Origin: Isurus oxyrinchus
Taxonomy: Eukaryota
NCBI GenBank assembly: GCA_026770705.1
Contig: JANJGN010000010.1
Location: 39,680,001-39,744,000 of the forward strand
Length of the DNA stretch: 64,000 bases
Direction of reading: 5' to 3'
Both the position numbers and the translations under genes were made by a program. Positions 3,306-62,058 of the stretch are shown here, piece after piece. Positions within the stretch are counted from its first letter, which is position 1; the number at the start of each line of letters is the position of its first letter. The notes under the pieces are model-generated. The model was not told the origin of the DNA and searched no databases. It worked only from the letters and a program-made list of their open reading frames with translations.

Positions 3306-3629
3306 CTCCAAGACACAAGATGAAACTGGACCTTGAAGGCCTGTGTGAAGTTGGGAAATGAAGAACCTCAACTATGAATTCCATCTGATGATATTCTGGC
3401 TTAATTAACAATTTCCATCGACTTTCACGGTAGAAGAAGCCAGTCGCTTCATCTAACTGGGGGTCGGTAGAAGTGATTCCTGGATCATCAGTTCTCTCAT
3501 CATTTTTAAACCACATGAACATTGTTTCTTTTGGAAAGAAGCCATATGCATTGCATACAATCGTTGCTTCTTTTCCTGCCTCTGGGAATTCTGGTTCACA
3601 TCTTATGTATCCTACTAATGGAGGAGATA
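3306..3629 (-). CDS. Gene A exon 8, post-TM C1-like Ig domain, F-strand Cys lost
   Basis: gttacag|TA acceptor, G|gtaag donor, 324 nt. SPPLV..TIVCNAYGFFPKETMFMWFKN..EFIVEVLH. The N-terminal part lies upstream of the ORF-track start. Confidence 0.85.
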
Positions 3630-4089
3630 CTGTAACAACACAAAATAAATGTTAAATGTTGTAGTATCTTGCAAGTTACTTCAATAACTGACAGAAAATA
3701 AAATTTAAAAATGCTAGTAAAGTTATTTGTCACAAACATATAGCTGGAAGATGAGGTTACACTAAATCTCAAATTTTGGTCATTCAGATCCTATTATTTA
3801 GTGAATATCATTGTGTGCCATAATGATATACACAACGCAAATTCAGACATTTAAAATGACTATAGAACCTGTTGCTTGTTTGCATCAAAATTATGCACAT
3901 AAATAATCATTTAAACTGATGTCCTACAAATACATTGCCAGCAAAACTACGTGACATGTCAATGAATGGAACAACGTGTGATTATATCAGGTTTTGGCAT
4001 GAATGTGCTTCTATCCCTCAGTATAGATAATACATTGGGAAAACAAATATTCTGTTTGTATTATGATAAATTATACTATAAAGCAGATG

Positions 4090-4730
4090 TACCAAGCTCA
4101 ACGCAAACTGGAGGAACAGCACCTCATCTACCAACTAGGCACTTTACAGTCTTCCAGACCGAATATTGAGTTCAAAACTTTAGATCATGAACTCTCTCCT
4201 CCATTCCCACCCCCTTTCCAATCCACCTTTTTTTTCCAATAATTTATATATATTTTTCTTTCCCCACCTATTTCCATTATTTTTAAATGTATTTCCATGC
4301 ATTGTTTTATCTCCACCTTTTAGCCTATTTCGATCCCTTCCTCCCACCCCACCCCCATTAGGGCTATCTGTACCTTGCTCATCCTGCTTTCTACCCTTAA
4401 TGTTACCTATTAGCACATTTCTTAGCTACTATCACCACCGTCAGCACCTCTTTGTCCCTTTGTCTATGATATCTTTTGGCAATCTCCACCTATCACTGGC
4501 CCTCTATCCAGCTCTACCTGTCCCACCTTCCCCTCCCCTCCCCCCCCAAACCAGCTTATATTTCCCCTCTCTTCTATTTTTCCTTAGTTCTGTTGAAGAG
4601 TCATACAGACTCGAAACATTAACTGTATTCCTCTCCACAGATGCTGTCAGACCTGCTGAATTTTTCCAGGTATTTTTATTTTTGTTTTTGTTTTGGATTT
4701 CCAGCATCCGCAGTTTTTTGCTTTTATCTT
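4090..4730 (+). mobile_element. Penelope-like element 3' fragment (pLTR)
   Basis: caacgcaaactggaggaacagcacctcatc and the terminus gatgctgtcagacctgctgaatttttccagg..atttccagcatccgcag are shared with the GIY-YIG element at 31-32 kb. Confidence 0.8.
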
Positions 4731-4814
4731 AGTGTACCATATTAATATGCTGCGCTGATAACGGAAATAAAAGTATCAAGCAGTTCATGATATGATTTTC
4801 TCCCTTTTATTAAA

Positions 4815-5090
4815 CAACATGTAATTATATAACACCTTTAACATAGTAAAATGTACTAAGGCATTTCACTGGTGCATTGTTGAACAAAATTTGACACCAA
4901 GTGACATGAGATATTAGGGCAGACTGGTCAAAGGGGTAGGTTTTAAAGGAGCATCTCAAATGAAATAAGATGGGTAGCAAGATCAAGGAAGGAAATTCAA
5001 GAGTTTAGGGCCTCAGGAGCTGCAGAGAGGACCACAAATGATGGAGTGATCAAAACTGGGGATGCGCGAGAAGCCAGAATTGGAGGAGCT
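4815..5090 (-). mobile_element. L2-like LINE 3' fragment
   Basis: Reverse complement resembles an L2-type tail; similar to 24530-25530. Confidence 0.5.
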
Positions 5091-5339
5091 TCATTACATC
5101 TGTTGTAGAAAAATATGCATTGCTTACATGACACTAATGAATAAAGGTAAAATCTGATTGATGGCACAACTCTCTCCAGTTCACAGGCACTATATATATA
5201 TAGCCTAAAAGAAGGATTCTTTTTACATACCCACTCAGCTGCAGGCCACAGATCACAAATACACTACTCTTCCCACTTAATTTTAGAGGCTCTCCTTTAG
5301 CTCCTATCCTTCAGAGGCATTTTTGTCTCTCCCCAAATG

Positions 5340-8683: not shown

Positions 8684-8995
8684 TCAAAGGAATCAGTGCA
8701 TAATCAGTTTTTCTGCACTCTCTGATACTTTCATGTTGGAATTCACAAGTTAACATTTTCCCGATATCTTCCCTAACAGGAACAAATTTCAAATGACTTA
8801 TGAAATTACAAAGGCCATCCTCTCCGAAGACCACTTCAGAATCAGCATTCATTGTCTTCAGTAAGATACCATCCTTTTTCCAAATAACTTTAATAATTTT
8901 TGGAAAGAAGGAATATATTCTACAAGATGCATATGCAGGTTCATCTACAATTGGAATTTCTGGTGACAGTTTTATATTATCACATTTTGGGATAG
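8684..8995 (-). CDS. Gene A exon 7, post-TM C1-like Ig domain
   Basis: ttcttcag|CT acceptor, A|gtaagt donor, 312 nt. ASCRIYSFFP..WKKDG..LTCEFQHES. Confidence 0.85.
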
Positions 8996-10037: not shown

Positions 10038-10415
10038 CTTTTATATTTAAATTAACCTCTTTACATATTTTTGAAGCTGTGGCTGGATGTGTTACTTCAC
10101 AAATATATACTGCTCCGCGGTCTTCATTAATGGTTGGTATAAAATGCAAAACACTGGTAACACTGTGCGTCCTATCTTCATATTCCAGCTCAGTTGTACT
10201 GTGGGCATATTTGGGTTGCTCGGTTTCACTCCCTTCAATGAACTCTGCTTGTTCTGGGTGCAGTTTCACAATTTCTTTTGTTACATTGTCCCTCTTTTTG
10301 GACCAAGTGATAGCCAGGGGTCTGGGTTTAAATCCATTAATTGGGCAGGTCACAGCCAGCACTTCTTCATGAATAATACAAGGCGGTATCACTATATCAG
10401 TCATCCTCGGTTCAA
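10038..10415 (-). CDS. Gene A exon 6, post-TM C1-like Ig domain
   Basis: aag|TT acceptor, G|gtattg donor, 378 nt. VTCPINGFKP..ITW..DRTHSVTSVL..YICEVTHPA. Confidence 0.85.
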
Positions 10416-13892: not shown

Positions 13893-14237
13893 GTCTAAAT
13901 GTACAAGGTTAATGAATTATAGTCCAGTAAGTAATATAGTATCTGCTCTCCAAATGTTGCGATCCTGCTGCATCTATTGCTCTTTATGTAAGGTTAATTC
14001 TAAATACAAGGGCAGTGGAATTAAAGGAGGCAACAAAAAACATACAGAATGAGTTGGATAAAATACATAACTGGACAGAGCGATTAGGGACTTGACATGC
14101 CAGTGACAAGTTTATTCTGGAAACCATTCTACAACAAGATAGTTTCATTGTGTCAAAATAAATGTACATGTATATCTCTTTATGAACAATATTTCTTTGA
14201 CTCTGTTCACTTAGCATCACTTGTAATTTACACTTAC

Positions 14238-14672
14238 TTCCTTCAACTTTCAGCTTGACTTCCTTAATTACAGGCTTTTCAAGGGTACTATGTTGGACTT
14301 GAACCTGGAGGATAGCTTCATTATCTCTATGAATATCAGGCCAGAACATAACTTTACAATTCACACTGGAGCTACCATCATTGTTGTGTTCAACAGCTGG
14401 CATCTCAAATGTGAAGGATTCATCTTGTTCACCAAATTGAGATCCACAATTTGAAATAAGCTGCTGATGGTCATCTACTACAGGATCCTGCAAGTCCCTC
14501 GGTGTATAGTTCCACTGATGAATGGTATTTGGTTTACTTTCCCATTTTCTTTGTAGCAACCAGTGAACAGAAATATTCTTGGGCCTATACCCAGAAATCT
14601 GACAATTCAGAAGAGCTTCTTGCAAATGTATAATCCGTGGAGGTTTGCTGATGTCAGAAACTTTTGGAGGAA
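14238..14672 (-). CDS. Gene A exon 5, post-TM C1-like Ig domain with ~40-aa loop insertion, F-strand Cys lost
   Basis: tttttag|TT acceptor, A|gtaagt donor, 435 nt. VPPKV..LLNCQISGYRP..W..NNDGSSSV..LQVQVQHSTL. Confidence 0.85.
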
Positions 14673-16565
14673 CTAAAAAAAGAACATTTGGCAGTTAATC
14701 CATTCTTGATCACGAGCCTGTCATTTCAAAAATATCAGCATGAATACATCCTATGCTGGACATTATTACTGGAATAACAAATATTAACACAATACAACAG
14801 TAGAGGTAAGCTCTAACTAAAAATGAAATAAAATAACCTGTTTCTTATTGAAACAAATGATCATTAGGATTCCTGAGTTAAAATAAAAGTATGAGAGGTA
14901 GAAAGGCACAAATAGACAAATCACAAACCAAGTATGAAACTAAGGCAAAAGTACAGAAACATCAAGATAAAAGGACAGAAGTCAGTAACTAAACAGAACA
15001 GCAGAGATCAGTAATGCATGAAGGAAGCCAGTGTTCCACAAAATAGTGAGAAAATCATCCAAGAAAAATCTAGACCCAGAGGGAAATCAAATAGGCATAG
15101 AGATCTGGGGAGAAAGATCAGTGGACATAAAAATCAGGCAACCACCACAATGAGTGTCACAAGAAGGGAGAGAGAGGACAAAATAGAGAGACATTATGTG
15201 TCTCACCATGAGCAACATTATAGGAGATTTAAAATATACTGGTATCTTAAAAACAATCTTACATCTCCAAATATGCCTCATGACACTTGACTTCCTGCTA
15301 TCACTCTCTTATTACTCTTTTTATAAATTGTTCTGCTCAGATTTACAATGGTTTTGCTGATGCAACCAAGTCATTTTGTGAAATCTTGGAACACAAGTTC
15401 CCACAAATAACTCAAAATACTTTGTAAAATAGTTTTGCATCCAACATTATAACTATTAGTTTCTGCGGGAAATAATATCAAAATAAGATGTAAAAATACT
15501 TGTAATTATCATATCAACATGATTAAATTCATTGATGTCTTCTAATGCATTCATTAAAGTTTTTACTGAAGACTTCAGCCTGGCCCAAAGCCTTGGCTTA
15601 GAATTGACGCATTTGTTTGAATCTGTGACTTTCAGTTGAATTTATTTTTTGTACTATGGCCACATGTAGGGCACCGAATTTGTCTGGATATATTCGTACC
15701 AGTTAGCTGTACCATTTTCATCAGCTGCTAGCACTTACACCTGGAAGTATTCTTGGGCAAGAAATCAAATGGGATACATTTCAAAAGCATAATAAAATAT
15801 ATTGATTTTTTTTAAAAACAATATTTATGAATGATCAGCACTGGTGTGTTAACAGAACACTGTATTGTGTTTATAAACTCGGAAAATATATTTAGCCGAA
15901 TGTGAGACAGAGGTGAGAACACACAAAGGGGTGAGAGCATGAGCACTCACAAACATGATAGTGGTGTGGCGGGAGGGCAAACAGGGAGAAGCAGTAGTTT
16001 TCAAGCTCCTTGCATTTAATTTCTACATTTCCTGCTCCTCAGTTCAGAGCTGTTATTTCATTTTGAGTGAAATGTTCAAGCCAGAGAACAGAAGTTCATG
16101 ATATCTTATGAATATTTATATTTCCCTCTTTTGATGGACATTGTAACTTTAATCTGAGCTGTTCAGAAGTAAACAAATGCAAAGTAGTATTTAGTCACAT
16201 GCAGAGTAAAATAGTTATTTTTAAAAATGTGGAGTTTGGTAACTTAAGAAAAAAGCCTGGGTTAATACTTTGTTTACAGTACTTTTGACTATTTGCAAAT
16301 AATATTGATAAAACTAAGTTTATTCCCAAAAATCTAAAGTTTCTTATTTGAAAGGCCTGCTATGTTGGGGCTCCTTGCCAATATACCGCAGTAATATCAC
16401 TCATGCTGCTTCTTGCATAACTTTAGATTGACCTCTGATAAAATCAATAGTTGCCCAGTTCTAAGAAAAGCACTCAAACAAAAACTCCAACAGAGATGAG
16501 CCATCTCAGTACAGATCAAGAATAATCCCTCTTGTATTTCTAAAGTGATTTGAAGAATATTTTAC

Positions 16566-16682
16566 CTTTTCTGAAATACTTCAAGTACATTAAAAATCCA
16601 ATGCCAATGATTGCTGTACACACCAATATGCTAACAATGACACTTGCAGTTATTATCCCCACTGGTATAACAACTTCTGGCT
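16566..16682 (-). CDS. Gene A exon 4, transmembrane segment
   Basis: ctacag|AG acceptor, G|gtaaaa donor, 117 nt. EPEVVIPVGIITASVIVSILVCTAIIGIGFLMYLKYFRK is a hydrophobic helix followed by basic stop-transfer residues. Confidence 0.85.
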
Positions 16683-17069
16683 CTGTAGATAAAATAAACA
16701 TGTATTTCAACTGTGAATAGCAAAATGGAGCAATATCTGTAAACTGAGACTTATTCCAAGACAATGGTTTATCTTAAAAGTAAAATAAAATACAAATGGA
16801 CAGCAAGTTGATAAAGTTTAACGCCTCATGTTAAAGGCTCTCAGAGTTGTGATTAATATTAACCTATATCCCTCAAATGTTGATCAGTCTTTGCATCTTT
16901 TCAGAATTTCTTGATTTTACTTGAGCTCCAGAATTTGAAGTTTTTCTAAATCTTCACAATACTTCTAAGAAATGAAAACATTACTATGATGTAGCTTTCT
17001 TAACTCATTGTACACTGCACTGGTCAGGAACAGTATGTCACATCAATTAAAAAAAATTCAAAATTCCAG

Positions 17070-19975: not shown

Positions 19976-20069
19976 AGGCTTGATGATAACCTAACTTGAA
20001 TTTCATCCTTGGATGTAAATTTGGTGTTTAAGTACGGCTAGAGGCAAGACCAGCGATTTAAGTAGCTGT

Positions 20070-22289: not shown

Positions 22290-22610
22290 CTTTGACAGTC
22301 AGTTGGGTTGTCAATTGTAAAGCTTCACTAAGTGATCGGTGTTTCACATAGCATATATAAGTATTGCCATCATCTTGGAGAGTTGGGCGCAACCTCAAAC
22401 GGCTAGAAACACTGTAGGTTCCATCATCATTTTTAACTGGAGATCCTGTGCAGATGTGTTTTGAAATTATTTGTTCACCATCTTTTGTTTTTTGTCTCCA
22501 ATTCATCTCAATTGAGACAGGATAAAAGCCAACAATGTCACACTTCACTGACTTCTCCGTACCATTCTCAATTGTGATTGTGGCCGAGGATAAGCTCACC
22601 TTTGGTGAGG
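22290..22610 (-). CDS. NCR3LG1: Gene A exon 3, extracellular Ig C1-set domain
   Basis: ttcacag|CC acceptor, G|gtaagt donor, 321 nt. ASP..KCDIVGFYP..W..KNDDGTYSVSS..YICYVKHRSL is a canonical C1 pattern similar to the B7-H6 C1. Confidence 0.9.
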
Positions 22611-23862: not shown

Positions 23863-24225
23863 CTGAAACAGTCATTGATGATTTTCCACTTCCATTATCT
23901 GGGGTTATAAAAACAACACAAGTGTAATCTCCTTCTTCAGCAAATTGCACATTTGGAAGAAAAAGAGAAGCGATTCCCATCTTTAAGTCGTCATCAAGAA
24001 TTGTTGCTCCTTTTCTGTACGGCGTATGTTTTCCACTAGTGAATTGATACACCTCTTGTCTGAGTGTATCTGGAGTGCCTAATTTTTGGAAGAACCACTG
24101 GACCCCCATGTTTTTAAGGTCAATTTCTCTCATATGACCAGACACTCGGCATTCAAGATGAACATCATCATTTACTTTGGCTTTCACAGTTCTTGAATTC
24201 ATTGACACAATTAGGTCACCTTGCT
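23863..24225 (-). CDS. NCR3LG1: Gene A exon 2, Ig V-set domain (B7-H6-like)
   Basis: ttgcag|AG acceptor, G|gtaaga donor, 363 nt. VHLEC..MGVQWF..GIASLFLPNVQFAEEGDYTCVVFITP has the canonical C-W-DxxYxC pattern and matches recalled B7-H6 motifs (MGITWF, GDASLRLP, YRCEVVVTP). Confidence 0.9.
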
Positions 24226-30110: not shown

Positions 30111-32079
30111 ACAAAAACAGAATTACCTGGAAAAAACTCAGTAGGTCTGGCAGCATCGGCGGAGAAGAGTTGACGTTTCGAGTCCTCATGACCCTTCGAC
30201 AGAACTTGAGTTCGAGTCCAAGAAAGAATTGAAATATAAGCTGGTTTAAGGTGTGTGTGTGGGGGGCGGAGAGATAGAGAGAGAGAGGTGGGGGGGTGTG
30301 GTAGTAGGGACAAACAAACAGTGATAGAAGCAGATCATCAAAAGATGCCAACGACAATAGTACAATAGAACACATAGGTGTTAAAGTTAAAGTTGGTGAT
30401 ATTATCTAAACGAATGTGCTAATTAAGAATGGATGGTAGGGCACTCAAGGTATAGCTCTAGTGGGGTTTTTTTTTTATATATAATGGAAATAGGTGGGAA
30501 AAGGAAAATCTTTATAATTTATTGGAAAAAAAAGAAAGGGGGAAACAGAAAGGGGGTGGGGATGGGGGAGGGAGCTCACGACCTAAAGTTGTTGAATTCA
30601 ATATTCAGTCCGGATGGCTGTAAAGTGCCTAGTCAGAAGATGAGGTGTTGTTCCTCCAGTTTGCGTTGGGCTTCACTGGAACAATGCAGCAAGCCAAGGA
30701 CAGACATGTGGGCAAGAGAGCAGGGTGGAGTGTTAAAATGGCAAGCGACAGCGAGGTTTGGGTCATTCTTGTGGACAGACCACAGGTGTTCAGCAAAGCG
30801 GTCGCCCAGTTTACGTTTGGTCTCTCCAATGTAGAGGAGACCACATTGGGAGCAACGAATGCAGTAGACTAAGTTGGGGGAAATGCAAGTGAAATGCTGC
30901 TTCACTTGAAAGGAGTGTTTGGGTCCTTGGACGGTGAGGAGAGAGGAAGTGAAGGGGCAGGTGTTGCATTTTTTGCGTGGGCATGGGGTGGTGCCATAGG
31001 AGGGGGTTGAGGAGTAGGGGGTGATGGAGGAGTGGACCAGGGTGTCCCGGACATCTTCCCTTCACCCCCCTTATCGGCACTCCGTAGGGATCGCTCCCTC
31101 CGGGACACCCTGGTCCACTCCTCCATCACCCCCTACTCCTCAACCCCCTCCTAAGGCACCACCCCATGCCCACGCAAAAGATGCAACATCTGCCCCTTCA
31201 CTTCCTCTCTCCTCACCGTCCAAGGACCCAAACACTCCTTTCAAGTGAAGCAGCATTTCACTTGCATTTCCCCCAACTTAGTCTACTGCATTCGTTGCTC
31301 CCAATGTGGTCTCCTCTACATTGGAGAAACCAAACGTAAACTGGGCGACCGCTTTGCAGAACACCTGTGGTCTGTCCGCAAGAATGACCCAAACCTCCCT
31401 GTCGCTTGCCATTTTAACACTCCACCCTGCTCTCTTGCCCACATGTCTGTCCTTGGCTTGCTGCATTGTTCCAGTGAAGCCCAACGCAAACTGGAGGAAC
31501 AACACCTCATCTTCCGACTAGGCACTTTACAGCCATCCAGACTGAATATTGAATTCAACAACTTTAGGTCGTGAGCTCCCTCCCCCATCCCCACCCCCTT
31601 TCTGTTTCCCCCTTTCTTTTTTTTCCAATAAATTATAAAGATTTTCCTTTTCCCACCTATTTCCATTACATATATTAAAAAAAAACCACTAGAGCTATAC
31701 CTTGAGTGCCCTACCATCCATTCTTAGTTAGCACATTCGTTTAGATAATATCACCAACTTTAACACCTATGTGTTCTATTGTACTATTGTCGTTGACATC
31801 TTTTGATGATCTGCTTCTATCACTGTTTGTTTATCCCTACAACCACAGCCCCCCCCCCACCTCTCTCTCTCTCTCTATCTCTCCGCCCCCCACACACACA
31901 CCTTAAACCAGCTTATATTTCAACTCTTTCATGGACTCGAACTCAAGTTCTGTCCAAGGGTCATGAGGACTCAAAACGTCAACTCTTTTCTTCTCCGCCG
32001 ATGCTGCCAGACCTGCTGAGTTTTTCCAGGTAATTCTGTTTTTGTTTTGGATTTCCAGCATCCACAGTTTTTTTGTTTT
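30111..32079. mobile_element. Penelope-like element, inverted duplication encoding the GIY-YIG endonuclease C-terminus, with 13-bp TSD
   Basis: Arms 30111-31051 (-) and 31099-32045 (+). FTCISPNLVYCIRCSQCGLLYIGETKRKLGDRFAEHL. TSD tacgacttctgga at 30098-30110 and 32080-32092. Confidence 0.9.
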
Positions 32080-32428: not shown

Positions 32429-32504
32429 CTGAAAGCGGTGCCAGAGTCACCAGCGCGACCACGACCTGTATCAGGAACGGCAACGAGTTCTCGGCCCAGC
32501 CCAT
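32429..32504 (-). CDS. NCR3LG1: Gene A exon 1, signal peptide MGWAENSLPFLIQVVVALVTLAPLS
   Basis: Strong Kozak GGGGCCATGG, hydrophobic core, donor TCAG|gtaaag, 76 nt (phase 1), inside a CpG-rich island. Confidence 0.85.
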
Positions 32505-32586
32505 GGCCCCTCTCTTTCTCTTTCTCGGTCGGCTCCGAGTTTCTCTCGCTGTCAGCAAGAAGCAGGAACAGCCTCGGCTCCGCGCA

Positions 32587-32598
32587 AGTTTCACTTTC
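32587..32598. promoter_or_regulatory. ISRE / IRF element AGTTTCACTTTC
   Basis: Perfect match to the consensus AGTTTCNNTTTC, 83-94 nt upstream of the gene A ATG. Confidence 0.7.
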
Positions 32599-44402: not shown

Positions 44403-44404
44403 AT

Positions 44405-49033: not shown

Positions 49034-49338
49034 TCAACTTAATTTCAGCTTGAAATATCTGCTAATTGGGTCCATCTCAGTGATGACATCAACTTGCAGC
49101 TGACAGTTGTGATCTTCTTGCTTTGGTATATAAGTTAGAGTTGTGGTGAATCCTGTACCAGATTGAAGTGGTGTGTTTGCAATGCAGCTTACATCGTAAA
49201 AAGGGTAAGCATCTCTGAACCAAGTGATGTGAGATTCTTCTATGGTGGCTCCTTCAATCGTGCAGGAAACTGTTACGGGCTGGCCAGCTTTAGGATAGTT
49301 TGTTTGGCAAGTTATCTGTGACACCTTCGGAAAATCAT
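49034..49338 (-). CDS. Gene B terminal exon, divergent C1-like Ig domain ending at the stop
   Basis: ttccaacag|AT acceptor. FPKV..VTVSCTIEG..ITWFRD..FTTTLTYIP..KLKLS*, with TGA at 49034-49036 and no good donor nearby. Confidence 0.8.
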
Positions 49339-50759: not shown

Positions 50760-53700
50760 GTTATGAGGATATGAATTAGGAGCAGGAATAGGCCACTTGG
50801 CCCTTTAAGCATGCTCTGTCATGCAGGAATGTGGAATTGAGGTTATAATGAGATCACGGTTGATCTGATTATAACCTCAATTCCACATTCCTGCCCACCC
50901 AGTTAAAACCTTTCACCCCCTTACTTATCAAGCTTCTACCTACCTCTGCCATTGAATATTCAAAGACTCTACTTCCACCACCTTTTGTGGAAGAGAATTT
51001 CAAAGATTCACAACCCTCAAAAAAATTCTCATGTGTCACAGAATTGTAACAACAAAAAAGGAGGCCATTCAGCCCATCATGTTTGCACTGATTTCCAAAT
51101 GAGCATAATAACCTAGTGCCATTGCCCTGCCTTTTCCCCTGCACATTGTTTCCATTCAAATAATCATCTAATTCCCTCCTGATTGCCTTGATTGAACCTG
51201 CCTCCACCACACTTCCACGCTGTGCATTCCAGACAAAAACCACTCATTGTGCGAAGAAGCTTTTTCTCACATCAGATTTGCTTCTTTTGCAAATCACTTC
51301 AAATCTGTGCCCTCACATTCTTGATCCTTTTATGAGTGGCAACAGCTTCTCCATATCTACTCTGTCCAGCCCCTTCATGATTTTGAACATCTTTATCAAA
51401 TCTCCTCTTAGCCGTCTTTTCTCCAAGGAGAACAGTCCCAACCTCTCCAATCTATCTTTGTAACTGAAGTTTCTCATCCCCGGAATCATTCTTGAAAACC
51501 TTTTCTACACTCTCTCTAATATGTTCACATCCTTCCTATAAGTGGTGCCCAAAATACTTCAGCTAGGTCTAACAAGTGTTTTATATAAATTCAGCATAAG
51601 CTCATTGCTCTTGTACTCTATGCCCATATTATTAAAGCCCAGGATACTATATGTTTTATTAACTGCTCTCTTCACCTGTCCTTCCACTTTCAATGATCTA
51701 TGTACATATACACCCAGATCTTTCTGCTCCTGCACCCCCTTCAAAATTTCACCCTTTATTTTATATTGTCTGTCCATGTTTTTCCTACCAAAATGCATCA
51801 CCTCACACTTCTCCGCATTGAACTTCATCTGCTACCTAGCTGCCCACTCCACCAACTTGTCTCTGTGCTTTGAAGTTCTGCACTGTCCTCGCAGTTTACA
51901 ACACTCCCAAGCTTTGTATCATCCACAAACTTTGAAACTGTCCCATGCACACCAAGATCTAATTCACTGGTATATATCAGGAAAAGCAAAGGTCCCAATA
52001 CCGACCACTGGGTAACTCCATTACAAACCTTCCTCCAGCCCGAAAAAAATCCTGAATATCCTGAATAGATGACCACTTATTTTCTGAACAGTGGCCCCTA
52101 GTACAAGATTCTCCCACAAGAGGAAACACCGTCACCACATCGACCCTGTCAAGACCCCTCAGGATGTTTTGTTTTTCAATCAAGTTGCCTCTTACTCTTC
52201 TAAACTCCAGCAAATACAAGCCTAACCTGTCCAACCTTTCCTCATGAGACACCAACCCATTCTAGGAATTAGTTGAGCAAACCTTCTCTGAACTGCTTCC
52301 AAAGCATTTATGTCCTCCCTTAAATAAGGAGACCAATACTGTACACAGTGCTCCAGTTGTGGTCTCACCAATACCCTGTACAACTGAAGCATAATCTCCC
52401 TACCTTTGCATTCCAATTCCCCTTGCAATAAACTGTAACATTCTATTAATTTTCCTATTTACTTGCTGTAGCTGCATATTAGTCTTTTGTGATTCATGCA
52501 CTAGGACCCCTAGATCGCTCTGCAATCTTTCAACATTTGGATAATATGCTTTTTTATTTTTCTGCCAAAATGGACAATTTCACACTTTCCAACATTTTAT
52601 TCCATTCCATTTGCCAGGTCTTTGCCTGCTTACTTAACATATCTATATCCCTTTGCCGTTTCCTTGTATCCTCTTCACATCTTGCTATCCTATCTATTTT
52701 TGTGTCATCAGCAAATTTAGCAACCATATCTTCGGCCCATTCATCCAAGTGATTTATATAAATTGTAAAAAGTCGAGGCACCAGCAATGATCCCTCTGCC
52801 ACACCACTCATTGCATCCAGCCAACTAGAAAAAAAAACTGATTTATGCCTACCTTCTGTTTCCTGTTAGCTAGCCAATCTTCTATCTGCTCCACACCATA
52901 AGCTTTTATTTTTCACAATAACATTGAAAGTGGCACTTTATCAAATGCCTTCTGGAAATCTAAATACAGTATGTCCTCCGGTTCCCCTTTTTTCGCAGTG
53001 TATGTTACTTTATCAAAGGACTCCAATAAGCTGGTTAAACATGGTTTGCTTGTCACAAAACCATGTTGACTCTGCCTGATTACCCTGAGTTTATCGAAAT
53101 ACCCTGCTATAACATCTTTAATAATTGCTTCTAAGATTTTCCCTAAGACAGATGTTAAGCCTGTAGTTCCAGGTTTTCTGTCTCCCTTTTTGAATAAAGG
53201 AGTTACATTTGCTATTTTCCAATCTAATTGAAGTTTTCGTGAATTTAGGGGATATTGGAAAATTAAAACCAACGCATCAACTATCTCACTAGCCACTTCT
53301 TTTAAGACCCTAGAATGAAGTCCATCAGAACCGGGGGACTTTCGGTCTGCAGCACTAACAGTTTTCACAGTGCCACTATCCTAGTGATTGTAATTTCCTC
53401 TCTCCTTTCCATTTCCCGATTTACAGCTATTTCTGGGATGGTACTTATATCCTCCGTGGTGAAGACCAATACAAAATACCAGTTCAGTTCATCTGCCAGC
53501 TCCTTATTTTCCATCATTAATTCACCAGACTCTTTTTCTATGGAATCAACACTCACTTTGTTAACCATTAACTCTTTTCTTTATTAAATTTCTATAGAAA
53601 CTCTGACTATCTGTCTTTATATTTCTAGCTAGCTTTCTCTCATCTTCTAATTTTTCCTTCCTTTTCAACCTTTTGGTCATTCTTTGCTATTTTTTTATAT

Positions 53701-55580
53701 TCTGTCCACTCTTCTGACCTGCCATCCACCTTTGCTCAATTATATGATTTATCTTTAAGTTTGGTGACTATCTTTAACTTTTTTAGGTAACCATTGATAG
53801 AGTCCTCCCCTTGGAATTATTCTCTCATTGGAATATATCTATTCTGTAAATTCTGAAATATCCTCTTAAATATCTGTCACTACATCTATATTGACCTATT
53901 CCTTCATCTAATTTGCCAGTTCACTTGAGCTAGCTGTGCTTTCATGCCCTCATAACTTCCCTTATTTAAGTTTAAAATATTAGCCTTGGATCCAGTCTTC
54001 TCTCCCTCAAACTGAATGTAAAATTCAATATTATGATTGTTACTACCTTGGGGCACCTTCAATATGAAGTCATTAATTAATCTGATCATGTTGCAAAATA
54101 CCAGCTTTAGTATAGTTGGCTCTTTGGTTGGCGCCAGAATGTGCTGTTCTAAGAAATTATCCCGAAAACATTCTCTAACTTCCTCATCTAGGCTACCTTT
54201 ACCTATCTGATTTTCCCAGTCTATATGCAGATTAAATTCCACTATGATTATTGTCATTTCTTTCTGATAACCTCCCATTATTTCTTCCTTTATACCCCAT
54301 TCTACTGTGTGGTTACTGTTAGGGGGCCTGTACTCCACTCCCACATGTAACTTCTTGCCTTTATCATTTTTCATCTTTACGCAGATCATTTATACATCCT
54401 GAACTCCTGGACTTAGGTCATGCCTCTCTATTGTGCTAATAGCATCATTATTAAACAGAGCCGCCCCTTCACCTTTTCCTAGCTTCCTGTCCCTCCTAAA
54501 TGTCACATACCTTCAATATTCAGATCCCAATCTATATAATCCTTCTATAATGTCTCTGTAATGGGTTTCAGATCGTACTTATTTATTTCTATTTGCGCTC
54601 TCAGTTCATCTGTTTTGCTTCAAATGCCAAGTGCATTCAGATACAGAGCCTTTAGTTTTGTCCTTTTACTATTTTTGTAACCTCTAGCCTTATCGGCTGA
54701 CTTACTCCTAGATTTGTACTCTATGTACTCTCTGTACCTTCTTGTTATGGTCTGGTTATCATTTCTCACATTAATACCTTTCTCTCATCTTTTCTCTGCA
54801 CTTTGATTTACCATATCTTGCCAAATTTGATCCTTTGATCCTGCTATTTAGTTTAAAGACCTCTCTACTTCCCTAGTTATGAGGCTTGCTAGAACACTGG
54901 TCCCAGCACTGTTCTGGTGCAGACCCTCCCAACGGAAAAACCCCACTTTCCCCAATACTGGTGCCAACACCCCATGACCTGGAACCCACTTCTCTCACAC
55001 GTCTTTGAGCCACATATTCATCTCTCTAATTTTATTTATCCTATGACAATTTGCATGTGGCTCAGGTAATAATCCAGAGATTATTACCTTTTGAGGTTCT
55101 GCTTTTTAATTTGGTGCCTAGCTCCTCATACTGTCTATGCAGAACCTCTTTCCTAGTTCTACCCATGTTGTTGGTACCTCAACGGACCACAATTACTAGA
55201 TCCTCCCCATCCCACTGCAAGTTCCTCTCCAGCCCTCAGTGCATATCCAAACCTTGGCAACGAGCAGGCAATGCAGCTGTCTGGATTCTTGCTCTTTGCT
55301 ATAGAGAACAATGTCAATCCCTCTTACTATACTGTCACCTACTACCACTACATTCCATTTTGCTTCCCCCACTTGCATGGCTTCCTGTACCCCGGCGCCA
55401 TGGTCAGTTTGTTCATCCACCCTTCAGCCCCCTCACTCATCCAAACAAGCCAAGAGAGCCTCAAACCTATTGGACAATTGCAAAGGCCGAGATTCCTCCC
55501 CTCTGGGTTCCCTTACCTGCCTCGCTCACAGTCATCCCAACCTGTCCCTGACCAAATCAGAAGACCCTATCCTAAGTGGT
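50760..55580 (-). mobile_element. Near full-length CR1 LINE (ORF1 esterase plus APE-RT) with a second CR1 (about 51035-52055) nested inside
   Basis: ORF1 VVVVGDSIVRGID, APE GVEYRPPNS, RT YLDFQKAFDKVP and KFADDTK; two CR1 tails. Confidence 0.85.
50823..50894. repeat. Hairpin with 34-bp arms (1 mismatch, 4-nt loop)
   Basis: gcaggaatgtggaattgaggttataatgagatca-cggt-tgatctgattataacctcaattccacattcctgc. Confidence 0.9.
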
Positions 55581-58097: not shown

Positions 58098-58409
58098 CTT
58101 TAAGGGATAATATGAATTTTTCCTCCTGAATTTCTTTTGTTGCTAAGTGAAGCACCGAACATCTGATCAAACTCGCATGATCCTTCTCAGCTACAATAAA
58201 TGTTAAGCTTGACTCTGATGAAAAAAGACCATCATCAGCAATCTTAGGCAGACTGTTAGTCACTCCTGTACAAGGTGCCCCATTTTTAAACCACTTTACT
58301 TGCACAGCAGCAGGAGCATAGTTTGTCAATGAGCTACTGAATGTGATAGGCTGATTAACTTCAGGCAGTTTTGGATCAACTTTAATTGGAGACAAGGTAG
58401 GAGAATAAG
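58098..58409 (-). CDS. Gene B internal exon, C1-like Ig domain (B-strand Cys replaced by Ser)
   Basis: ctttcag|CT acceptor, G|gtgagt donor, 312 nt. ITFSSSLTNYAP..WFKNG..DGLFSSESSL..IRCSVLH. Confidence 0.85.
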
Positions 58410-58674
58410 CTGAAAGACAAATAAAAAGGTTCATGAATGTTTAGTTATTGAAGCCAGCTGATTAATTTCTGAATATAAAAAGAAAATAAAGGGTGCTTTT
58501 CTAGTCTGAATTATACACAAATTTATGAAAGAAAATTTAAGATCTCATGAGTTTGCTCAAAAGTTACTATTAGAATTTTTCTAATATTTTCTATAGACAA
58601 ACAACTTACATAGTTACAGAAAAGACTTTTTGAAAACAGCACTGATCTTAAAGTGAAGATGGTGCTGGTGTATT

Positions 58675-58790
58675 TTTTTATTCATTCACGGGCTGTGGGC
58701 TTCGCTGGCTGGGCCAGCATTTATTGCCCATCCCTAGTTGCCCTTGAGAAGCTGGTGGTGAGCTGCCCTCTTGAGCCGCTGCAGTCCATT
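58675..58790 (-). mobile_element. LINE family 2 3' end fragment
   Basis: Family tail sequence. Confidence 0.7.
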
Positions 58791-59424
58791 GGTTTACTAC
58801 ATTAAAGCAGCATGTAGTAACAGATACTTTGACAAATGGATATCAAAGGGACGTCCCAAAAATGGTCACTGAATTAATGGTCAGGCAGGAAGTAGTGTCA
58901 GACAGAAGGGAAATAAAACAAATTCAAAAATCATAATTATAGTAATTTGATCCAAACCCTATTAGGATGATTAGGATAATAAAAGTTAAATATTTTTAGC
59001 AAACCGAAGAACTGATGTCTTCAGGTAAGAAAAGCTTCCGAACTAGTGAGAATTAGCTCCAATAAATGAAATTACTTTAAAAGATACATTTATTTGGAAT
59101 CTGTTTTTACAGTGAATATAATGATCTTAAATCAAATATCCTTCCTTTAAGTAACTTCAATTGAAGTTTTCCTTCTCCAATTTATCGAATTTCAATTTGC
59201 TCACAATCATTTAATGTGAAATGACTCCTAAATGTGTCTCCCCATAAGCATCTCCCCTCCCCCATCACCACCACCCAGCACATTGCACTACCTCTAGTAT
59301 CTAGTCAAATTCTTCCAGGTTATTTCTGGGTGACCTAGTGAAGTATATTCACTTAATCACAAATATTTAAATATGAAGTGGAACTTTTCAAACTTGTGGA
59401 GAGAAGCATCAGGGTAAAACCTAC

Positions 59425-59736
59425 CTTGAAGTGTTAGAACTGTCTGCTTTGTAACTGGAGTTTTTAAATTAACATGCTCCACACGGAAGGAAAATTCTTC
59501 TTCAAAATCTAGTGCAGTTGGAGTTACTTGCAATCGGGAAGTCAACCGATAAGTTCTATTGTTCTCCATCACAGGTCCTTTAACCGTAATCCCTTCGACT
59601 ATCCGGTTTCCATTTTTTAGCCAAGCTGTATCAATGGCTTGTGGGTAAAAGTTAGTGACGTTGCAGATCAAAGCAAGATCTCTACCATACGTGGCTTCTG
59701 GTGGGTCAAGTTTGATATCTTCAACAGATGGAACTC
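59425..59736 (-). CDS. Gene B internal exon, C1-like Ig domain (F-strand Cys lost)
   Basis: ttttacag|GA acceptor, G|gtaggt donor, 312 nt. LICNVTNFYPQAIDTAWLKNG..NRTYRLTSRL..FSFRVEH. Confidence 0.85.
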
Positions 59737-60179
59737 CTGTAAAAGTTGCATGAATCCACAGTTGATTACTCTACCAAATAGCCATCATGTTGAAGGATCA
59801 AAAAGGAGATTCAAAAGATCTATCTTTTCCCCCCAAATGTTGAATGTTTAAACAAGGGCAGTCATCAAATCTTTCATTGTGCAAGTTAGACCTTTATCAA
59901 AGATAACGACAACTTAAAAAACCCTTTACCTTACAGAACATTTATGCTACTGATTTGATAATCACAGCCATGTTGGAATAGCACAATTTAGGGCCAATGC
60001 AGCCACAGAAAGGAACTTGGAGGTCACAGACAAACAAGGAATGTAATGTGAGGTGGCACTGTTCCTGAAGGTTAGGCTGATCTCAAAGAGGTAGCACAAG
60101 CCTGTGGCTCCAATGGCAAAGTTATCATCATCCCCAAAATAAAAGCAATGCTAGCATCCTGTTAGAAATAGCTATGTAG

Positions 60180-60525
60180 GGAGAGGAGGTGTCATAGTGG
60201 TATTGTCACTAGACTAGTATTCCAAAGACCCAGGGTAATGCTCTGGGGACTCGGGTTCAAATTCCACCATGGCAGATGATGAAATTGGAATTCAATAAAA
60301 ATCTGCAACTAAAAGTTTGATGATGACCACCATGAAACCATTGCTGATTGTTGTAAAAACCCATCTGGTTCACTAATGCCTTTTAGAGAAAGTATTTTCT
60401 GCTTTCCTTGCCTGGTTTGGCCTACATGTCACTCCAGACCCAGAGCAATGTGGTTGACTCTTAAATGCCCTCTGAACAAGGGCAACTAGAGATGGGCAAT
60501 AAATGCTGAACGGAAAATAAAAAAT
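60180..60525 (+). mobile_element. tRNA-derived SINE sharing both ends with LINE family 2
   Basis: A box tgtcatagtgg (60190-60200), B box ggttcaaattcc (60254-60265), and LINE-type tail gatgggcaataaatgctg. Confidence 0.8.
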
Positions 60526-61119
60526 GTTTTTGGCCACTAATAGAGTACATATTTGAAGACCTTACAGCTGCATGTAAAGTTTTATTTAATGCAAGCTTAT
60601 TGCACTGCAGAACTGATTCAGGAGTCATTCCAGTTACGTTAGTGTAATATTTGTAAAACCAAGTTGATTCTCAACAATTATTGCTATGCCATCAACTTAG
60701 TCCAGGCTTGTCCAACCTGTGGCCCCTGGGCCGCACTGCAGTCTGCGAAGACCCCCAATGTGGCCCCCGGAACGACTGTTGAAAATGCCAGCTCAGTACA
60801 TTTGAAGATTTCTTCAGGAGCCTGCTCCTCCTATCAAAGCCTGCTTTTCTCCTGCGTTTGCTGCTGATAGGCAACAGCAAGTATTTGAAGATAGAGAGAC
60901 ACACTTTGGAGCACATGTTCACCACGCTTTCCCCAGGCTATTGGTGCTTTAGCCCAGCTCCGTTCCTCTGGCTCTCCCCCAGTACTCCCTGCATCCCACC
61001 AGTTCTCCCCTGGCCCTCCACATTTGGGCACCGCTAGGCCTCAGACTTTGCTCCAGCTCATATCACACCTACCCCTGCCACCAAGCCAAGTTCATGAGTG
61101 ATGGTAAGTGAGCATAAGG

Positions 61120-61480
61120 GTGAGTCAGCGAGTGAGTGAGGGAGTGAGTGCAGATGAGTGTGTGTTTGTGGTTGAGTGTGTATGTGTGCATGCCCACACG
61201 CGAGACAGAGGGGGAGCGCACACGCGAGAGGGAGCGCACATGGGAGCGAGGGAGGGAGGGGGAGCGCGCGCGCAAGGGAGGGGGAGCGCGTGTGCGAGGG
61301 AGGGAGGGGGACCATGCGTGCGCCAGAGGGAGGGGGAGTGCACGTGCGCGAGGGAGGTGGGAGGGGGAGCGCACGCCAGAGGGAGGGGGAGCGCCGCAAG
61401 AGGGAGAGAAAGGGTGACAGAAAGGGTGAGCGCACGTGCCTGCGCATGAGCGAGAGAGAGCGAGAGAGGGGGGGACAGGG
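61120..61480. repeat. G/A-rich, CpG-rich imperfect tandem repeat (gaggggggagcgcacgcgc-like units), possibly inside a hAT-like element starting near 60703
   Basis: Low-complexity repeated units; ccaggcttgtccaacctgtggccc resembles a hAT terminus. Confidence 0.7.
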
Positions 61481-61737
61481 CTGATAAGGAGCAGACAGTG
61501 TGTGTCTGGCTCCCAGCTGCAGGGTTCTCATTCACCCTCACCTCCGCCCACCAACTGGCACTCTCACAGGGGATGAAGGTGAATGAGTGAGCACCCTGAG
61601 ACTCGGAGACTGAGTCGCTTCTATTAAAACATGTCATTTTAATGAATTGGAAACATATCTGGCCGTTTCCAAATAACCTATTCAATATTCTACAATTGTT
61701 ACTGTGAAGTTGCACTTCTTGTTGAAATGAGACTTAC

Positions 61738-62058
61738 CCATTATTTTCAAAATATGACTGGATGAGACAGGTTTGTTTGAAGTTGCAGAGTGAAGGATTT
61801 GCATTTTGAACTCTTTTCCATGGTCCTGATAAGTTGGAATGAATGTCCTTTTGGACCATTGATAGTACGAATCAGTTGTTTTATCAAACTGGACTTCAGA
61901 TGTTTCAACTCCATCCATGGTTTTAACAAACCCTTCGAACCAGAATATTTGATTGTCTTTTGGAAAGAAGCTGTGTGCTTTGCAGGAAAGTTGTACAGAT
62001 TTTCCCACTTCTGGGTGTACAGGATCTGCTGTAACTTCTGTTACCTTTGGCATTGACA
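61738..62058 (-). CDS. Gene B internal exon, C1-like Ig domain (F-strand Cys lost)
   Basis: gtgcag|TG acceptor, G|gtaagt donor, 321 nt. QLSCKAHSFFP..FWF..EFKMQILHSA. Confidence 0.85.

What the first reader, a model, noticed from the sequence alone, without database searches (positions are those of the whole stretch)
3306..62058. Systematic loss of the Ig disulfide in post-TM/terminal C1 domains (6 of 8)
The extracellular V and C1 keep both cysteines. F-strand Cys is replaced in A-ex5 (LQVQVQH), A-ex8 (FIVEVLH), B-61738 (FKMQILH), B-59425 (FSFRVEH) and B-49034 (LQVDVI). B-strand Cys is Ser in B-58098. The Trp and F/YxP motifs are largely retained, the reading frames stay open, and all but the terminal domain keep the post-F-strand His. 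This pattern is expected for Ig folds under selection in the reducing cytosol, as in many titin or filamin domains, and independently supports the intracellular topology.
Basis: partly seen in the sequence, partly recalled or inferred. Interest (0 to 1): 0.8.

Follow-up and report, generated by a model that had tools for sequence, protein, structure and literature searches.

The report
Disulfide-free antibody-fold domains behind the membrane
Two neighbouring shark genes of the B7-H6 immune-ligand type carry, after their membrane anchor, a chain of antibody-type domains that probably sit inside the cell, most of which lost the usual internal disulfide bond over 400 million years ago.

Summary
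On the minus strand, 6 of the 8 C1-set Ig exons that follow the membrane exon lack one canonical cysteine. The ectodomain V and C1 keep both.

RNA-type contigs from 4 of 4 runs (4 studies) splice the TM exon directly to the next Ig exon. The architecture SP-V-C1-TM-(C1)n is therefore real in mRNA.

A profile search found a conserved, almost wholly unnamed family with this layout, from chimaera, sharks and rays to coelacanth, lungfish, bichir, frogs and alligator.

The cysteine loss is old and tied to domain position:
- D3, D6 and D7 lost the F-strand Cys.
- D8 lost the B-strand Cys.
- D4 and D5 keep both almost without exception.

A cytosolic tail is supported by one TM with a positive-inside bias, and by sequons that are enriched in the ectodomain but at chance in the tail. 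AlphaFold models the Cys-less domains as confident C1 folds.

Retention in D4 and D5, relatives that keep every pair, and conserved non-canonical cysteines in D3 and D9 make cysteine loss weak independent evidence.

I found no paper describing this tail, but Flajnik 2012 could not be read. The scan had noted similar genes nearby.

The parts
32587..32598 (-). ISRE-like motif about 85 bases upstream of the start codon of gene A
   Evidence: The exact consensus matches 2 times in the window against 0.64 expected, and 12 of 100 shuffles reach 2, so only its position is telling. It was noted earlier by the scan (s1-866119).
32429..32504 (-). Leader (signal peptide) exon of gene A: ATG at 32504, phase-1 donor after 32429
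   Evidence: hydrophobic 25-residue leader with a CAG|GTAAAG donor; the first 28 residues of Heterodontus P0005 match here (50% identity, E 0.003). Its splice to the V exon was not verified with reads.
23863..24225 (-). V-set exon (D1), both cysteines kept
   Evidence: the nearest solved structure is B7-H6 / NCR3LG1 (E 8e-13), then CD276.
22290..22610 (-). Extracellular C1-set exon (D2), both cysteines kept
   Evidence: C1-set, E 2e-13. UrIg2 4e-16, B7-H6 7e-14; the loose end behind 16684 reads as the end of this exon, so C1 is joined to the TM exon.
16566..16682 (-). Transmembrane exon, 117 nt, phase 1-1: hydrophobic core followed by a basic stretch
   Evidence: a joint from 16566 to 14672 in contigs of 4 of 4 runs. 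Because the exon is symmetrical, it could be skipped without a frame shift.
14238..14672 (-). D3 (A-ex5): C1-like domain with a long insert. F-strand Cys is replaced by Val; an extra E-strand Cys is present; the insert holds an acidic dileucine motif
   Evidence: spliced to the TM exon upstream and to ex6 downstream.
10038..10415 (-). D4 (A-ex6): C1-set, both cysteines kept
8684..8995 (-). D5 (A-ex7): C1-set, both cysteines kept
3306..3629 (-). D6 of gene A (A-ex8): F-strand Cys replaced by Val. The exon ends in a donor site, so the gene continues outside the window
   Evidence: AlphaFold pLDDT 94.8; the best structural matches are IgM C-mu4, MHC class II beta2, beta2-microglobulin and IgE-Fc.
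61738..62058 (-). D6 of gene B (B-1): F-strand Cys replaced by Met
   Evidence: 69% identical to Heptranchias P0183, which has the same C/M pattern.
59425..59736 (-). D7 of gene B (B-2): F-strand Cys replaced by Phe
   Evidence: C1-set, E 5e-15.. Phe in 16 of 21 family members at this position.
58098..58409 (-). D8 of gene B (B-3): B-strand Cys replaced by Ser, F-strand Cys kept
   Evidence: B-strand Cys in 0 of 15, F-strand Cys in 15 of 15.
49034..49338 (-). D9 of gene B (B-4), the last coding exon with the stop codon. The canonical F position is Val. An A-strand Cys and a Cys four residues before the F position are kept
   Evidence: only a weak Ig_3 match.; the equivalent domain of P0003 folds as a seven-strand sandwich with pLDDT 76-90.

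Best explanation
Both genes encode type I membrane proteins of the B7-H6 (NCR3LG1)-like branch of the B7 family. The layout is signal peptide, V domain, C1 domain, one transmembrane helix, then a rod of C1-set-derived Ig domains with almost no linker. There are seven domain positions in the shark genes: D3-D6 of gene A and D6-D9 of gene B lie in this window.

There is one stop-transfer helix, with acidic residues before it and basic residues after it, and no later hydrophobic segment. The tail should therefore stay in the cytosol, where the Ig disulfide cannot form.

The tail domains arose by duplication of phase 1-1 C1 exons placed behind the TM exon in an early jawed vertebrate. In D3, D6 and D7 the F-strand cysteine was replaced by Val, Leu, Ile, Met or Phe. 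In D8 the B-strand cysteine was replaced by an aliphatic residue. All of this predates the split of cartilaginous and bony fishes. D9 lost its F cysteine later in elasmobranchs. D4 and D5 keep both cysteines, most likely as buried core residues.

Shown here: the sequence pattern, the splicing in RNA-type contigs, the family and its position-specific conservation, and the predicted folds.

Inferred: the cytosolic location, the absence of disulfides, and any function.

My guess at function is that the tail acts as a membrane-proximal scaffold or sensor. It would couple the state of the cell to surface display or endocytosis of an interferon-inducible ligand for NKp30-type receptors, in the way the cytosolic B30.2 domain serves butyrophilins.
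For: Splicing: the joint 14672-16566 (GT..AG on the minus strand) is seen in one contig each from 4 of 4 runs, from 4 studies. Loose ends read as C1 joined to TM and ex5 joined to ex6. One contig continues 3051 nt beyond ex5.

Family:
- 269 representatives at E<=1e-3, 31 at E<=1e-30.
- 33 of the 37 best hits have a hydrophobic segment (mean hydropathy 2.2-3.5) before the tail, and none of the core ones has a second such segment behind it.
- members in Callorhinchus, Heterodontus, Heptranchias, Pristis, Narcine, Amblyraja, Latimeria, Protopterus, Erpetoichthys, frogs and Alligator. Names are 'uncharacterized' or 'NCR3LG1'.

Cysteines by position, given as B then F:
- D2: 32/32, 34/34
- D3: 17/21, 0/23
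- D4: 28/29, 29/30
- D5: 26/26, 25/26
- D6: 24/25, 0/24
- D7: 20/21, 3/21
- D8: 0/15, 15/15
- D9: 13/16, 8/15

five further elasmobranch orthologues of gene B show the same pattern.

Topology:
-, TM flanks over 25 proteins: K+R 39 and D+E 61 before the TM; K+R 66 and D+E 31 after it.
-, sequons: 66 in 6066 ectodomain residues (47.9 expected by shuffling) against 96 in 18243 tail residues (100.3 expected); binomial p 1e-5.
- the only sequon column conserved in at least 25% of sequences is in D2 (19/36). There is none in D3-D9.
- an N-terminal hydrophobic leader in 25 of 31 family proteins.

Folds:
- in the Callorhinchus model every tail domain has block pLDDT of about 80-92. Low confidence falls only in the leader, the TM region, two inserts and the acidic linker.
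- A-ex8 has pLDDT 94.8, and its nearest solved folds are classical C1 domains (TM-score 0.7-0.79).

Other:
- tail exons are as conserved against Heterodontus (75-84%) as V and C1 (81-85%).
- an acidic dileucine motif sits at one place in the D3 insert in about 9-10 of 24 sequences, against 0.106 per 100 residues elsewhere.
Against: - There is no protein-level evidence of topology or of the redox state of any cysteine.
- D4 and D5 keep both cysteines almost invariantly. This is also what a real disulfide would give.
- Relatives with three post-TM C1 domains keep every pair: Pogona P0040, Ranitomeya P0045, Pelodytes P0051 and others.
- D3 has a conserved E-strand Cys that co-occurs with the B Cys in 14 of 23 sequences. 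D9 has an A-strand Cys (17/17) plus a Cys four residues before the F position (10/13). I could not measure distances, because no coordinates are returned.
- Three of the 37 best models (P0019, P0031, P0035) lack the TM segment, and the TM exon is symmetrical, so a TM-less secreted isoform is possible. Contigs drop rare variants.
- The four runs are only guessed to be RNA. One of them (X1) also holds the introns.
- The only nucleotide comparison available is ex5 in the contigs of three runs against the window. It shows 8 listed differences, all nonsynonymous, in 7 codons, so there is no sign of purifying selection on D3 at short range.
Confidence: 0.7

Rival explanations
1. The tail domains work outside the cell. 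The symmetrical 117-nt TM exon is a cassette. When it is skipped, the protein is a secreted chain of nine or ten Ig domains folded in the ER. The TM-containing form is then only a membrane variant whose tail is a passenger.
For: - The TM exon is phase 1-1.
- Three of the 37 best models run from D2 straight on without a TM.
- D4 and D5 keep both cysteines.
- Conserved extra cysteines in D3 and D9 could pair.
- Multi-C1 extracellular proteins exist in sharks. One is UrIg2 (PMC12227049; outline and section 7 read, passages). Control hits P0034 and P0043 have all their C1 domains with both Cys and a C-terminal TM.
Against: - All junction-spanning contigs in 4 of 4 runs include the TM exon.
- 33 of the 37 best models include the TM. 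Short exons are easily missed by gene predictors.
- Sequons in the tail are at chance, and none is conserved.
- Four domain positions have carried an unpaired buried cysteine for over 400 million years.
Confidence: 0.12
2. The tail is cytosolic, but the cysteine losses have nothing to do with the compartment. They are neutral, lineage-old substitutions of a dispensable bond, and say nothing about topology either way.
For: - The loss is position-specific rather than general.
- 245 of 425 post-TM C1 domains in the wider set keep both Cys.
- Several relatives keep all of them.
- The orphan partner cysteine is itself conserved: D6 B 24/25, D8 F 15/15.
Against: C1 domains before the TM keep both Cys in 112 of 120 cases, against 245 of 425 behind it. 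Control proteins whose TM is at the C-terminus keep them in 10 of 10 and 11 of 11 domains. So relaxation does track the side of the membrane. This rival differs from the best explanation only in how much weight the cysteines carry.
Confidence: 0.15
3. The post-TM exons are decaying remnants: exonised or pseudogenised duplicates that no longer encode folded domains.
For: - One canonical Cys is missing in 6 of 8 domains.
- 8 of 8 listed differences in ex5 between the contigs and the window are nonsynonymous.
Against: - Frames are open and splice sites intact.
- The exons are spliced in contigs of 4 runs.
- The same domains in the same order, with the same substitutions, run from chimaera to coelacanth and alligator.
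- pLDDT is 80-95.
- Identity to Heterodontus equals that of the ectodomain.
Confidence: 0.01

Closest known systems
B7-H6 / NCR3LG1 (B7 family ligand of NKp30)
   Same: Both have a signal peptide, a V domain, a C1 domain and a single TM. The V exon's best solved match is human B7-H6 (E 8e-13), and the C1 exon also matches it (E 7e-14). NCBI names the alligator and some frog family members NCR3LG1.
   Different: By my recollection, not from a call, the mammalian protein has a short non-Ig tail described as Gag-like. Here the tail is a chain of three to eight C1-set Ig domains. Orthology and NKp30 binding were not tested.
UrIg / UrIg2 of elasmobranchs (PMC12227049; outline and section 7 read, passages found)
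   Same: Both are non-rearranging shark genes with a V exon followed by many phase 1-1 C1 exons that expand by exon duplication. UrIg2 is the best solved match of the ectodomain C1 (E 4e-16).
   Different: UrIg2 has a VJ-type V domain, all nine to eleven C1 domains outside the cell, and the TM at the C-terminal end. Here the TM follows the first C1. UrIg2-like control hits keep every disulfide.
Butyrophilins (V-C1-TM-B30.2)
   Same: Both have a B7-like V-C ectodomain, one TM and a folded beta-sandwich module in the cytosol. BTN1A1 and BTN3A are among the V-exon matches. This is the nearest functional analogy: inside-out sensing.
   Different: The cytosolic module here is Ig C1-set, not B30.2/SPRY. 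No such Pfam match appears in any exon.
Cytosolic Ig arrays of titin, filamin and related muscle proteins
   Same: Both are strings of Ig-fold domains that fold without a structural disulfide in a reducing compartment. By my recollection, some titin domains keep the B and F cysteines unpaired.
   Different: Those are I-set or filamin-type domains in soluble proteins. Here the domains are C1-set by Pfam and by fold and hang from a membrane anchor behind an immune-type ectodomain.
IGSF1
   Same: Both have an Ig chain interrupted by an internal hydrophobic segment.
   Different: By my recollection, IGSF1 has C2-type domains, is cleaved at the internal linker and has a second TM at the end. No second hydrophobic segment exists here.

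Membership tests
B7-H6 / NCR3LG1-like B7 family | Signal peptide, one V-set and one C1-set domain, then a single TM | tested here: met
   Searches show the exons. One search shows the C1-TM splice. The leader-to-V splice was not verified.
B7-H6 / NCR3LG1-like B7 family | The V and C1 domains are closest to B7-H6 among characterised proteins | tested here: met
   B7-H6 8e-13, CD276 8e-11, BTN1A1 6e-7. B7-H6 7e-14, but UrIg2 (4e-16) and one IgA heavy-chain entry (3e-15) score higher for C1.
B7-H6 / NCR3LG1-like B7 family | Orthology to mammalian NCR3LG1 by tree or synteny | not tested
   This rests only on the automatic NCBI names of alligator and frog relatives.
B7-H6 / NCR3LG1-like B7 family | Binds NKp30 | not testable with these tools
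   This needs a binding assay.
UrIg / UrIg2 | All C1 domains extracellular, with the TM at the C-terminal end | tested here: not met
   The TM exon lies between the first and second C1 exon and is spliced there. The last exon, B-4, ends without a hydrophobic segment.
Butyrophilin | Cytosolic B30.2/SPRY domain | tested here: not met
   No such Pfam match appears in any of the 11 exons.
Titin-type cytosolic Ig (I-set) | The domains are I-set rather than C1-set | tested here: not met
   C1-set is the best Pfam family for 9 of the 10 non-V Ig exons. The nearest solved folds of A-ex8 are IgM C-mu4, MHC II beta2 and beta2-microglobulin.
C1-set Ig domain | Seven-strand sandwich with the C-strand Trp and the F/Y-x-P and x-V-x-H motifs | tested here: met
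   Trp in 9 of 9, His in 8 of 9. Searches give the strand pattern and pLDDT.
C1-set Ig domain | Canonical B-F disulfide pair | tested here: not met
   One partner is missing in 6 of the 8 post-TM domains of the window, and at D3, D6, D7 and D8 throughout the family.
IGSF1-like split Ig chain | A second TM after the internal hydrophobic linker | tested here: not met
   no second hydrophobic segment behind the internal one in the core relatives.

The most novel reading that the evidence does not exclude
Jawed vertebrates from chimaeras to crocodilians keep a family of B7-H6-like surface ligands whose cytoplasmic tails are rods of three to eight C1-set immunoglobulin domains. C1-set is the domain type otherwise confined to antibodies, T-cell receptors, MHC and their extracellular kin. 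These tails would work without disulfides in the cytosol, as an inside-out sensor or scaffold that controls display of an interferon-inducible ligand for NKp30-type receptors. They would be the first C1-set domains known to function inside the cell.
Probability: 0.5. Interest if true: 0.85.

Novelty: new variant of a known kind. Interest (0 to 1): 0.7.

Why it matters
C1-set domains are the hallmark of the adaptive immune system and are treated as strictly extracellular and disulfide-stabilised. A conserved family in which they have sat behind the membrane for over 400 million years matters in several ways:
- It would show that this fold can be selected to fold and function in the cytosol.
- Its position-specific replacements (Val, Leu, Ile, Met or Phe for Cys) are a natural series of disulfide-free C1 domains, of interest for intrabody design.
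- It points to an unstudied signalling or sorting module attached to a B7-H6-type ligand in most non-mammalian jawed vertebrates.

The claim is directly testable with tagged constructs and thiol alkylation.

Tried and rejected
Pseudogene decay is rejected, because of open frames, splicing, deep conservation and confident folds.

A separate gene for the tail exons is rejected, because the contigs join C1-TM-ex5-ex6.

UrIg2 membership is rejected on the position of the TM.

A D6 alternative pair (A-strand Cys with the Cys four residues before Trp) is unlikely. The two co-occur in only 11 of 28 sequences, with 5 and 3 singletons, and by strand geometry they lie at opposite ends of the domain. The geometry is my inference, not a measurement.

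The paralogue pair A-ex8/B-1 is too diverged (35% protein identity).

Cys-Cys distances could not be measured, because structure prediction returns no coordinates.

Literature: nine searches found no paper describing Ig domains in the cytoplasmic tail of B7-H6-like proteins.
- Flajnik et al. 2012 (PMC3709836) and Ohta & Flajnik 2015 (PMC4594805) are the papers most likely to mention it. Neither is held, so nothing of them was seen and the novelty claim is provisional.
- For PMC12227049 I read the outline and section 7, and passages by term search.
- For PMC10751288 and PMC3964593 I read only passages by term search.
- No supplements were opened. The UrIg2 supplement figures may bear on domain comparisons.

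The search for homologous proteins with the tail of P0003 returned only 7 proteins, which is a limit of its word index. I did not build or search a joined (spliced) protein model of either gene. All searches were done exon by exon, or with database proteins.

Full report
WHAT IS THERE

The window is vertebrate DNA, rich in LINE-type repeats, with two genes on the minus strand.

I listed stop-to-stop frames, scored splice sites and fixed the exon ends.

Gene A:
- a candidate leader exon, 32504-32429;
- a V exon, 24225-23863;
- a C1 exon, 22610-22290;
- a 117-nt hydrophobic exon, 16682-16566;
- four further Ig exons: 14672-14238 (D3), 10415-10038 (D4), 8995-8684 (D5) and 3629-3306 (D6).

The last of these ends in a good donor site, so gene A runs on beyond the window start.

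Gene B contributes four exons: 62058-61738, 59736-59425, 58409-58098 and 49338-49037, followed by a stop. Its 5' part lies beyond the window end.

Every exon is phase 1-1. Pfam calls V-set for the first exon and C1-set for all the others except the last, which gets only a weak Ig_3 match. A tblastn of five family proteins against the window found no further Ig exon. I never joined the exons into a spliced model. All searches were made exon by exon or with database proteins.

THE OBSERVATION

A MAFFT alignment of the nine C1-type exons and an HMM built from it place the canonical residues without ambiguity:
- The B-strand Cys is present in all but B-3, which has Ser.
- The F-strand Cys is present only in the ectodomain C1, ex6, ex7 and B-3. 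It is Val in ex5, ex8 and B-4, Met in B-1 and Phe in B-2.
- The C-strand Trp is kept in 9 of 9.
- The His after the F strand is kept in 8 of 9.

So 6 of 8 post-TM domains lack one partner, as claimed.

Two qualifications apply:
- A-ex8 and B-1 are each other's best match (35% identity, E 6e-22). They are the same position (D6) in two old paralogues, so the eight domains are seven positions.
- A-ex5 and B-4 hold other cysteines that turn out to be conserved (see 'The family' below).

IS THE TM EXON REALLY IN THE SAME mRNA?

This is the point on which 'post-TM' depends. The look-up of sequencing runs listed 19 runs, none on record as RNA and most only guessed to be RNA. I laid four runs from four studies on 13900-16900.

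In 4 of 4 runs a contig joins 16566 to 14672, skipping 1893 bases with GT..AG ends on the minus strand. That is exactly the predicted TM-donor to D3-acceptor junction.

The loose ends at the outer borders read as the end of the C1 exon and the start of ex6. One contig runs 3051 nt further downstream. Depth is confined to the two exons in three runs. The fourth run (X1) also holds the introns, either as pre-mRNA or as DNA.

No TM-skipped form appeared. But contigs drop rare variants, and the exon is symmetrical, so skipping would keep the frame.

THE FAMILY

A profile of A-ex8 plus B-1 was scored against 1.84 billion representatives. It gave 269 hits at E<=1e-3 and 31 at E<=1e-30.

The best hits are proteins of 800-1250 residues with the same layout. 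Of the 37 best:
- 33 have a strongly hydrophobic segment before the tail;
- three models lack it (P0019, P0031, P0035);
- one (P0034, 'titin-like', great white shark) is a different, UrIg2-like protein with ten C1 domains and a C-terminal TM.

None of the core proteins has a second hydrophobic segment behind the first.

Cluster look-ups and one word-index search name the sources: Callorhinchus, Heterodontus, Heptranchias, Pristiophorus, Pristis, Narcine, Amblyraja, Leucoraja, Rhinoraja, Scyliorhinus, Latimeria, Protopterus, Erpetoichthys, several frogs, Alligator and Pogona. The names given are 'uncharacterized protein', 'Ig-like domain-containing', or by automatic transfer 'natural cytotoxicity triggering receptor 3 ligand 1' and 'SIRP-like'.

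Among the proteins listed, gene A is closest to a Heterodontus protein (75-85% per exon). Gene B is closest to a Heptranchias protein (56-71%).

Against solved structures, the V exon is nearest to human B7-H6 (8e-13). The C1 exon is nearest to UrIg2 (4e-16), with B7-H6 also high among its matches at 7e-14.

CYSTEINES ACROSS THE FAMILY

I assigned each domain of the 37 best hits to a position by its best match to reference domains, and kept only confident assignments. The counts, as B-strand Cys then F-strand Cys, are:
- D2 (ectodomain): 32/32, 34/34
- D3: 17/21, 0/23
- D4: 28/29, 29/30
- D5: 26/26, 25/26
- D6: 24/25, 0/24
- D7: 20/21, 3/21 (Phe in 16)
- D8: 0/15, 15/15
- D9: 13/16, 8/15

Five more elasmobranch orthologues of gene B repeat the pattern C/M, C/F, [IV]/C and C/[VI].

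The losses seen in the window are therefore inherited. They are specific to domain position and predate the split of cartilaginous and bony fishes, except that of D9.

Over all 150 listed representatives, C1 domains before an internal TM keep both Cys in 112 of 120 determined cases, and those behind it in 245 of 425. These counts are not phylogenetically independent. The class 'no internal TM' mixes fragments with true controls, so I do not use it.

RESULTS AGAINST A SIMPLE 'REDUCING CYTOSOL' READING

- D4 and D5 have kept the pair throughout.
- Relatives with three post-TM domains keep every pair: Pogona P0040, Ranitomeya P0045, Pelodytes P0051 and others.
- D3 has an E-strand Cys (16/24) that co-occurs with the B Cys in 14 of 23 sequences.
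- D9 has an A-strand Cys (17/17) and a Cys four residues before the F position (10/13). Both are present in B-4.

By strand geometry these two pairs could be close in space. That is my inference, since no coordinates are returned.

It is not met: 2 of the 6 Cys-less domains of the window have such a candidate.

TOPOLOGY FROM OTHER FEATURES

- Charge. Over 25 family proteins, the 15 residues before the hydrophobic core hold 39 K+R and 61 D+E. The 15 after it hold 66 K+R and 31 D+E. The tail domain D3 starts within about seven residues of the core.
- Sequons. N-x-S/T sequons number 66 in 6066 ectodomain residues (47.9 expected from shuffling) and 96 in 18243 tail residues (100.3 expected). The difference in density has binomial p 1e-5.
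- Conserved sequons. The only sequon column shared by at least a quarter of sequences is in D2 (19/36). There is none in D3-D9.
- Leader. An N-terminal hydrophobic leader is present in 25 of 31 family proteins and in the candidate leader exon of gene A.
- Sorting motif. An acidic dileucine motif sits at one place in the D3 insert in about 9-10 of 24 sequences, including the window, Callorhinchus, Latimeria and Alligator. The background is 0.106 per 100 residues in the other domains. This is a hint only.

FOLDS

AlphaFold2 was run on Callorhinchus P0003 with a 36-row family alignment. Mean pLDDT was 80.8. Every tail domain shows block values of about 80-92 and a seven-strand pattern. Low confidence is confined to the leader, the TM region, the inserts of D3 and D4 and the acidic linker before D9.

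The window's own A-ex8, with a 27-row alignment, gave pLDDT 94.8 and pTM 0.84. Foldseek placed it next to IgM C-mu4, MHC class II beta2, beta2-microglobulin, IgE-Fc and light-chain constant domains (TM-score 0.7-0.79). The Cys-less domains are thus predicted to be ordinary C1 folds.

SELECTION

Per-exon identity to Heterodontus is as follows:
- ectodomain: V 81%, C1 85%;
- tail: D3 76%, D4 78%, D5 75%, D6 84%.

The tail is no less conserved than the ectodomain.

The only nucleotide-level comparison I could make is between the window and the contigs of three runs in ex5. There are 8 listed differences, all nonsynonymous, in 7 codons. The TM exon has 2 synonymous and 1 nonsynonymous difference. 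The intron between them differs by 27 of about 1818 bases. With so few changes this is compatible with neutrality or diversifying selection. It shows no short-range constraint on D3, and I report it as a result against a strongly constrained D3.

WHAT IT IS, AND WHAT IS KNOWN

The genes are members of a B7-H6-like lineage with a tail of C1-set domains behind the membrane.
- They are not UrIg2, whose C1 domains are all extracellular with the TM at the end (PMC12227049, section 7).
- They are not butyrophilins, because they have no B30.2 domain.
- They are not titin-type, because they are C1-set and not I-set.

The nearest working analogy is the butyrophilin plan: a V-C ectodomain plus a folded cytosolic beta-sandwich.

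An ISRE-like motif lies about 85 bases upstream of the start codon. This fits an interferon-inducible immune gene, though the motif count in the window is not significant by itself.

Nine literature searches found no description of such tails. The two papers most likely to mention them are not held. Novelty is therefore provisional.

Earlier notes of this scan describe the same two genes, and a third one 188 kb away, in similar terms. They are AI notes and I do not count them as support.

VERDICT

- It is an ancient, position-specific trait of a conserved, uncharacterised family.
- The cytosolic topology is the best reading (about 0.7), but it rests mainly on the TM, charge and sequon evidence and on the splicing. 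The cysteine pattern is consistent with it rather than independent proof.

Noticed in passing
window 32429-32598 (-): A candidate leader exon of gene A has a good Kozak context. An exact ISRE-type motif lies about 85 bases upstream of the ATG, in a GC-rich stretch. This suggests interferon induction.
   Followed up: partly
window 22290-22610 (-), residue 53 of the C1 exon: The ectodomain C1 carries a third cysteine, conserved in 30 of 34 family members. It is unpaired within the domain, so it may form an interchain bond (dimer).
   Followed up: no
window 14238-14672 and 16566-16682: Contigs of three runs share a variant of ex5 with 8 listed differences from the window, all nonsynonymous. The fourth run matches the window. 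Two of the variant residues equal the Heterodontus state. These are alleles, close species or recent copies, possibly under diversifying selection.
   Followed up: partly
window 14400-14480 (-), insert of D3: An acidic dileucine motif ([DE]xxxL[LI]) sits at the same place in the D3 insert in about 9-10 of 24 family sequences. It is a possible endocytic sorting signal.
   Followed up: partly
window 30427-31723: There is an inverted pair of near-identical ORFs: 30427-30831 (+) against 31319-31723 (-), and 30636-31061 (-) against 31155-31571 (+). One of them looks like a GIY-YIG-type nuclease as in Penelope-like elements (my recollection). This is a head-to-head repeat insertion in the long first intron of gene A.
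   Followed up: no
window 1-3250, 24300-49000, 50800-54400: There are many reverse-transcriptase ORFs of LINE type on both strands. The 25 kb between the two genes holds no Ig exon.
   Followed up: no
proteins P0038, P0041, P0056 (frogs, coelacanth): These larger relatives (777-2158 residues) have, behind the TM, an alternation of C1 domains that lost both cysteines (L..V or V..V) with domains that kept both. This looks like a two-exon repeat unit, as in UrIg2.
   Followed up: no
proteins P0019, P0031, P0035: In these gene models the TM segment is missing and D2 runs straight on into the tail. This is either a missed short exon or a real TM-skipped, secreted isoform.
   Followed up: partly
D7 of frog members (P0009, P0035, P0037 and, less surely, P0017, P0023, P0026, P0031): Frog sequences have Cys at the F position of D7, where sharks, coelacanth, lungfish and bichir have Phe. 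This is a possible reversion by a single base change, or a non-orthologous domain.
   Followed up: no
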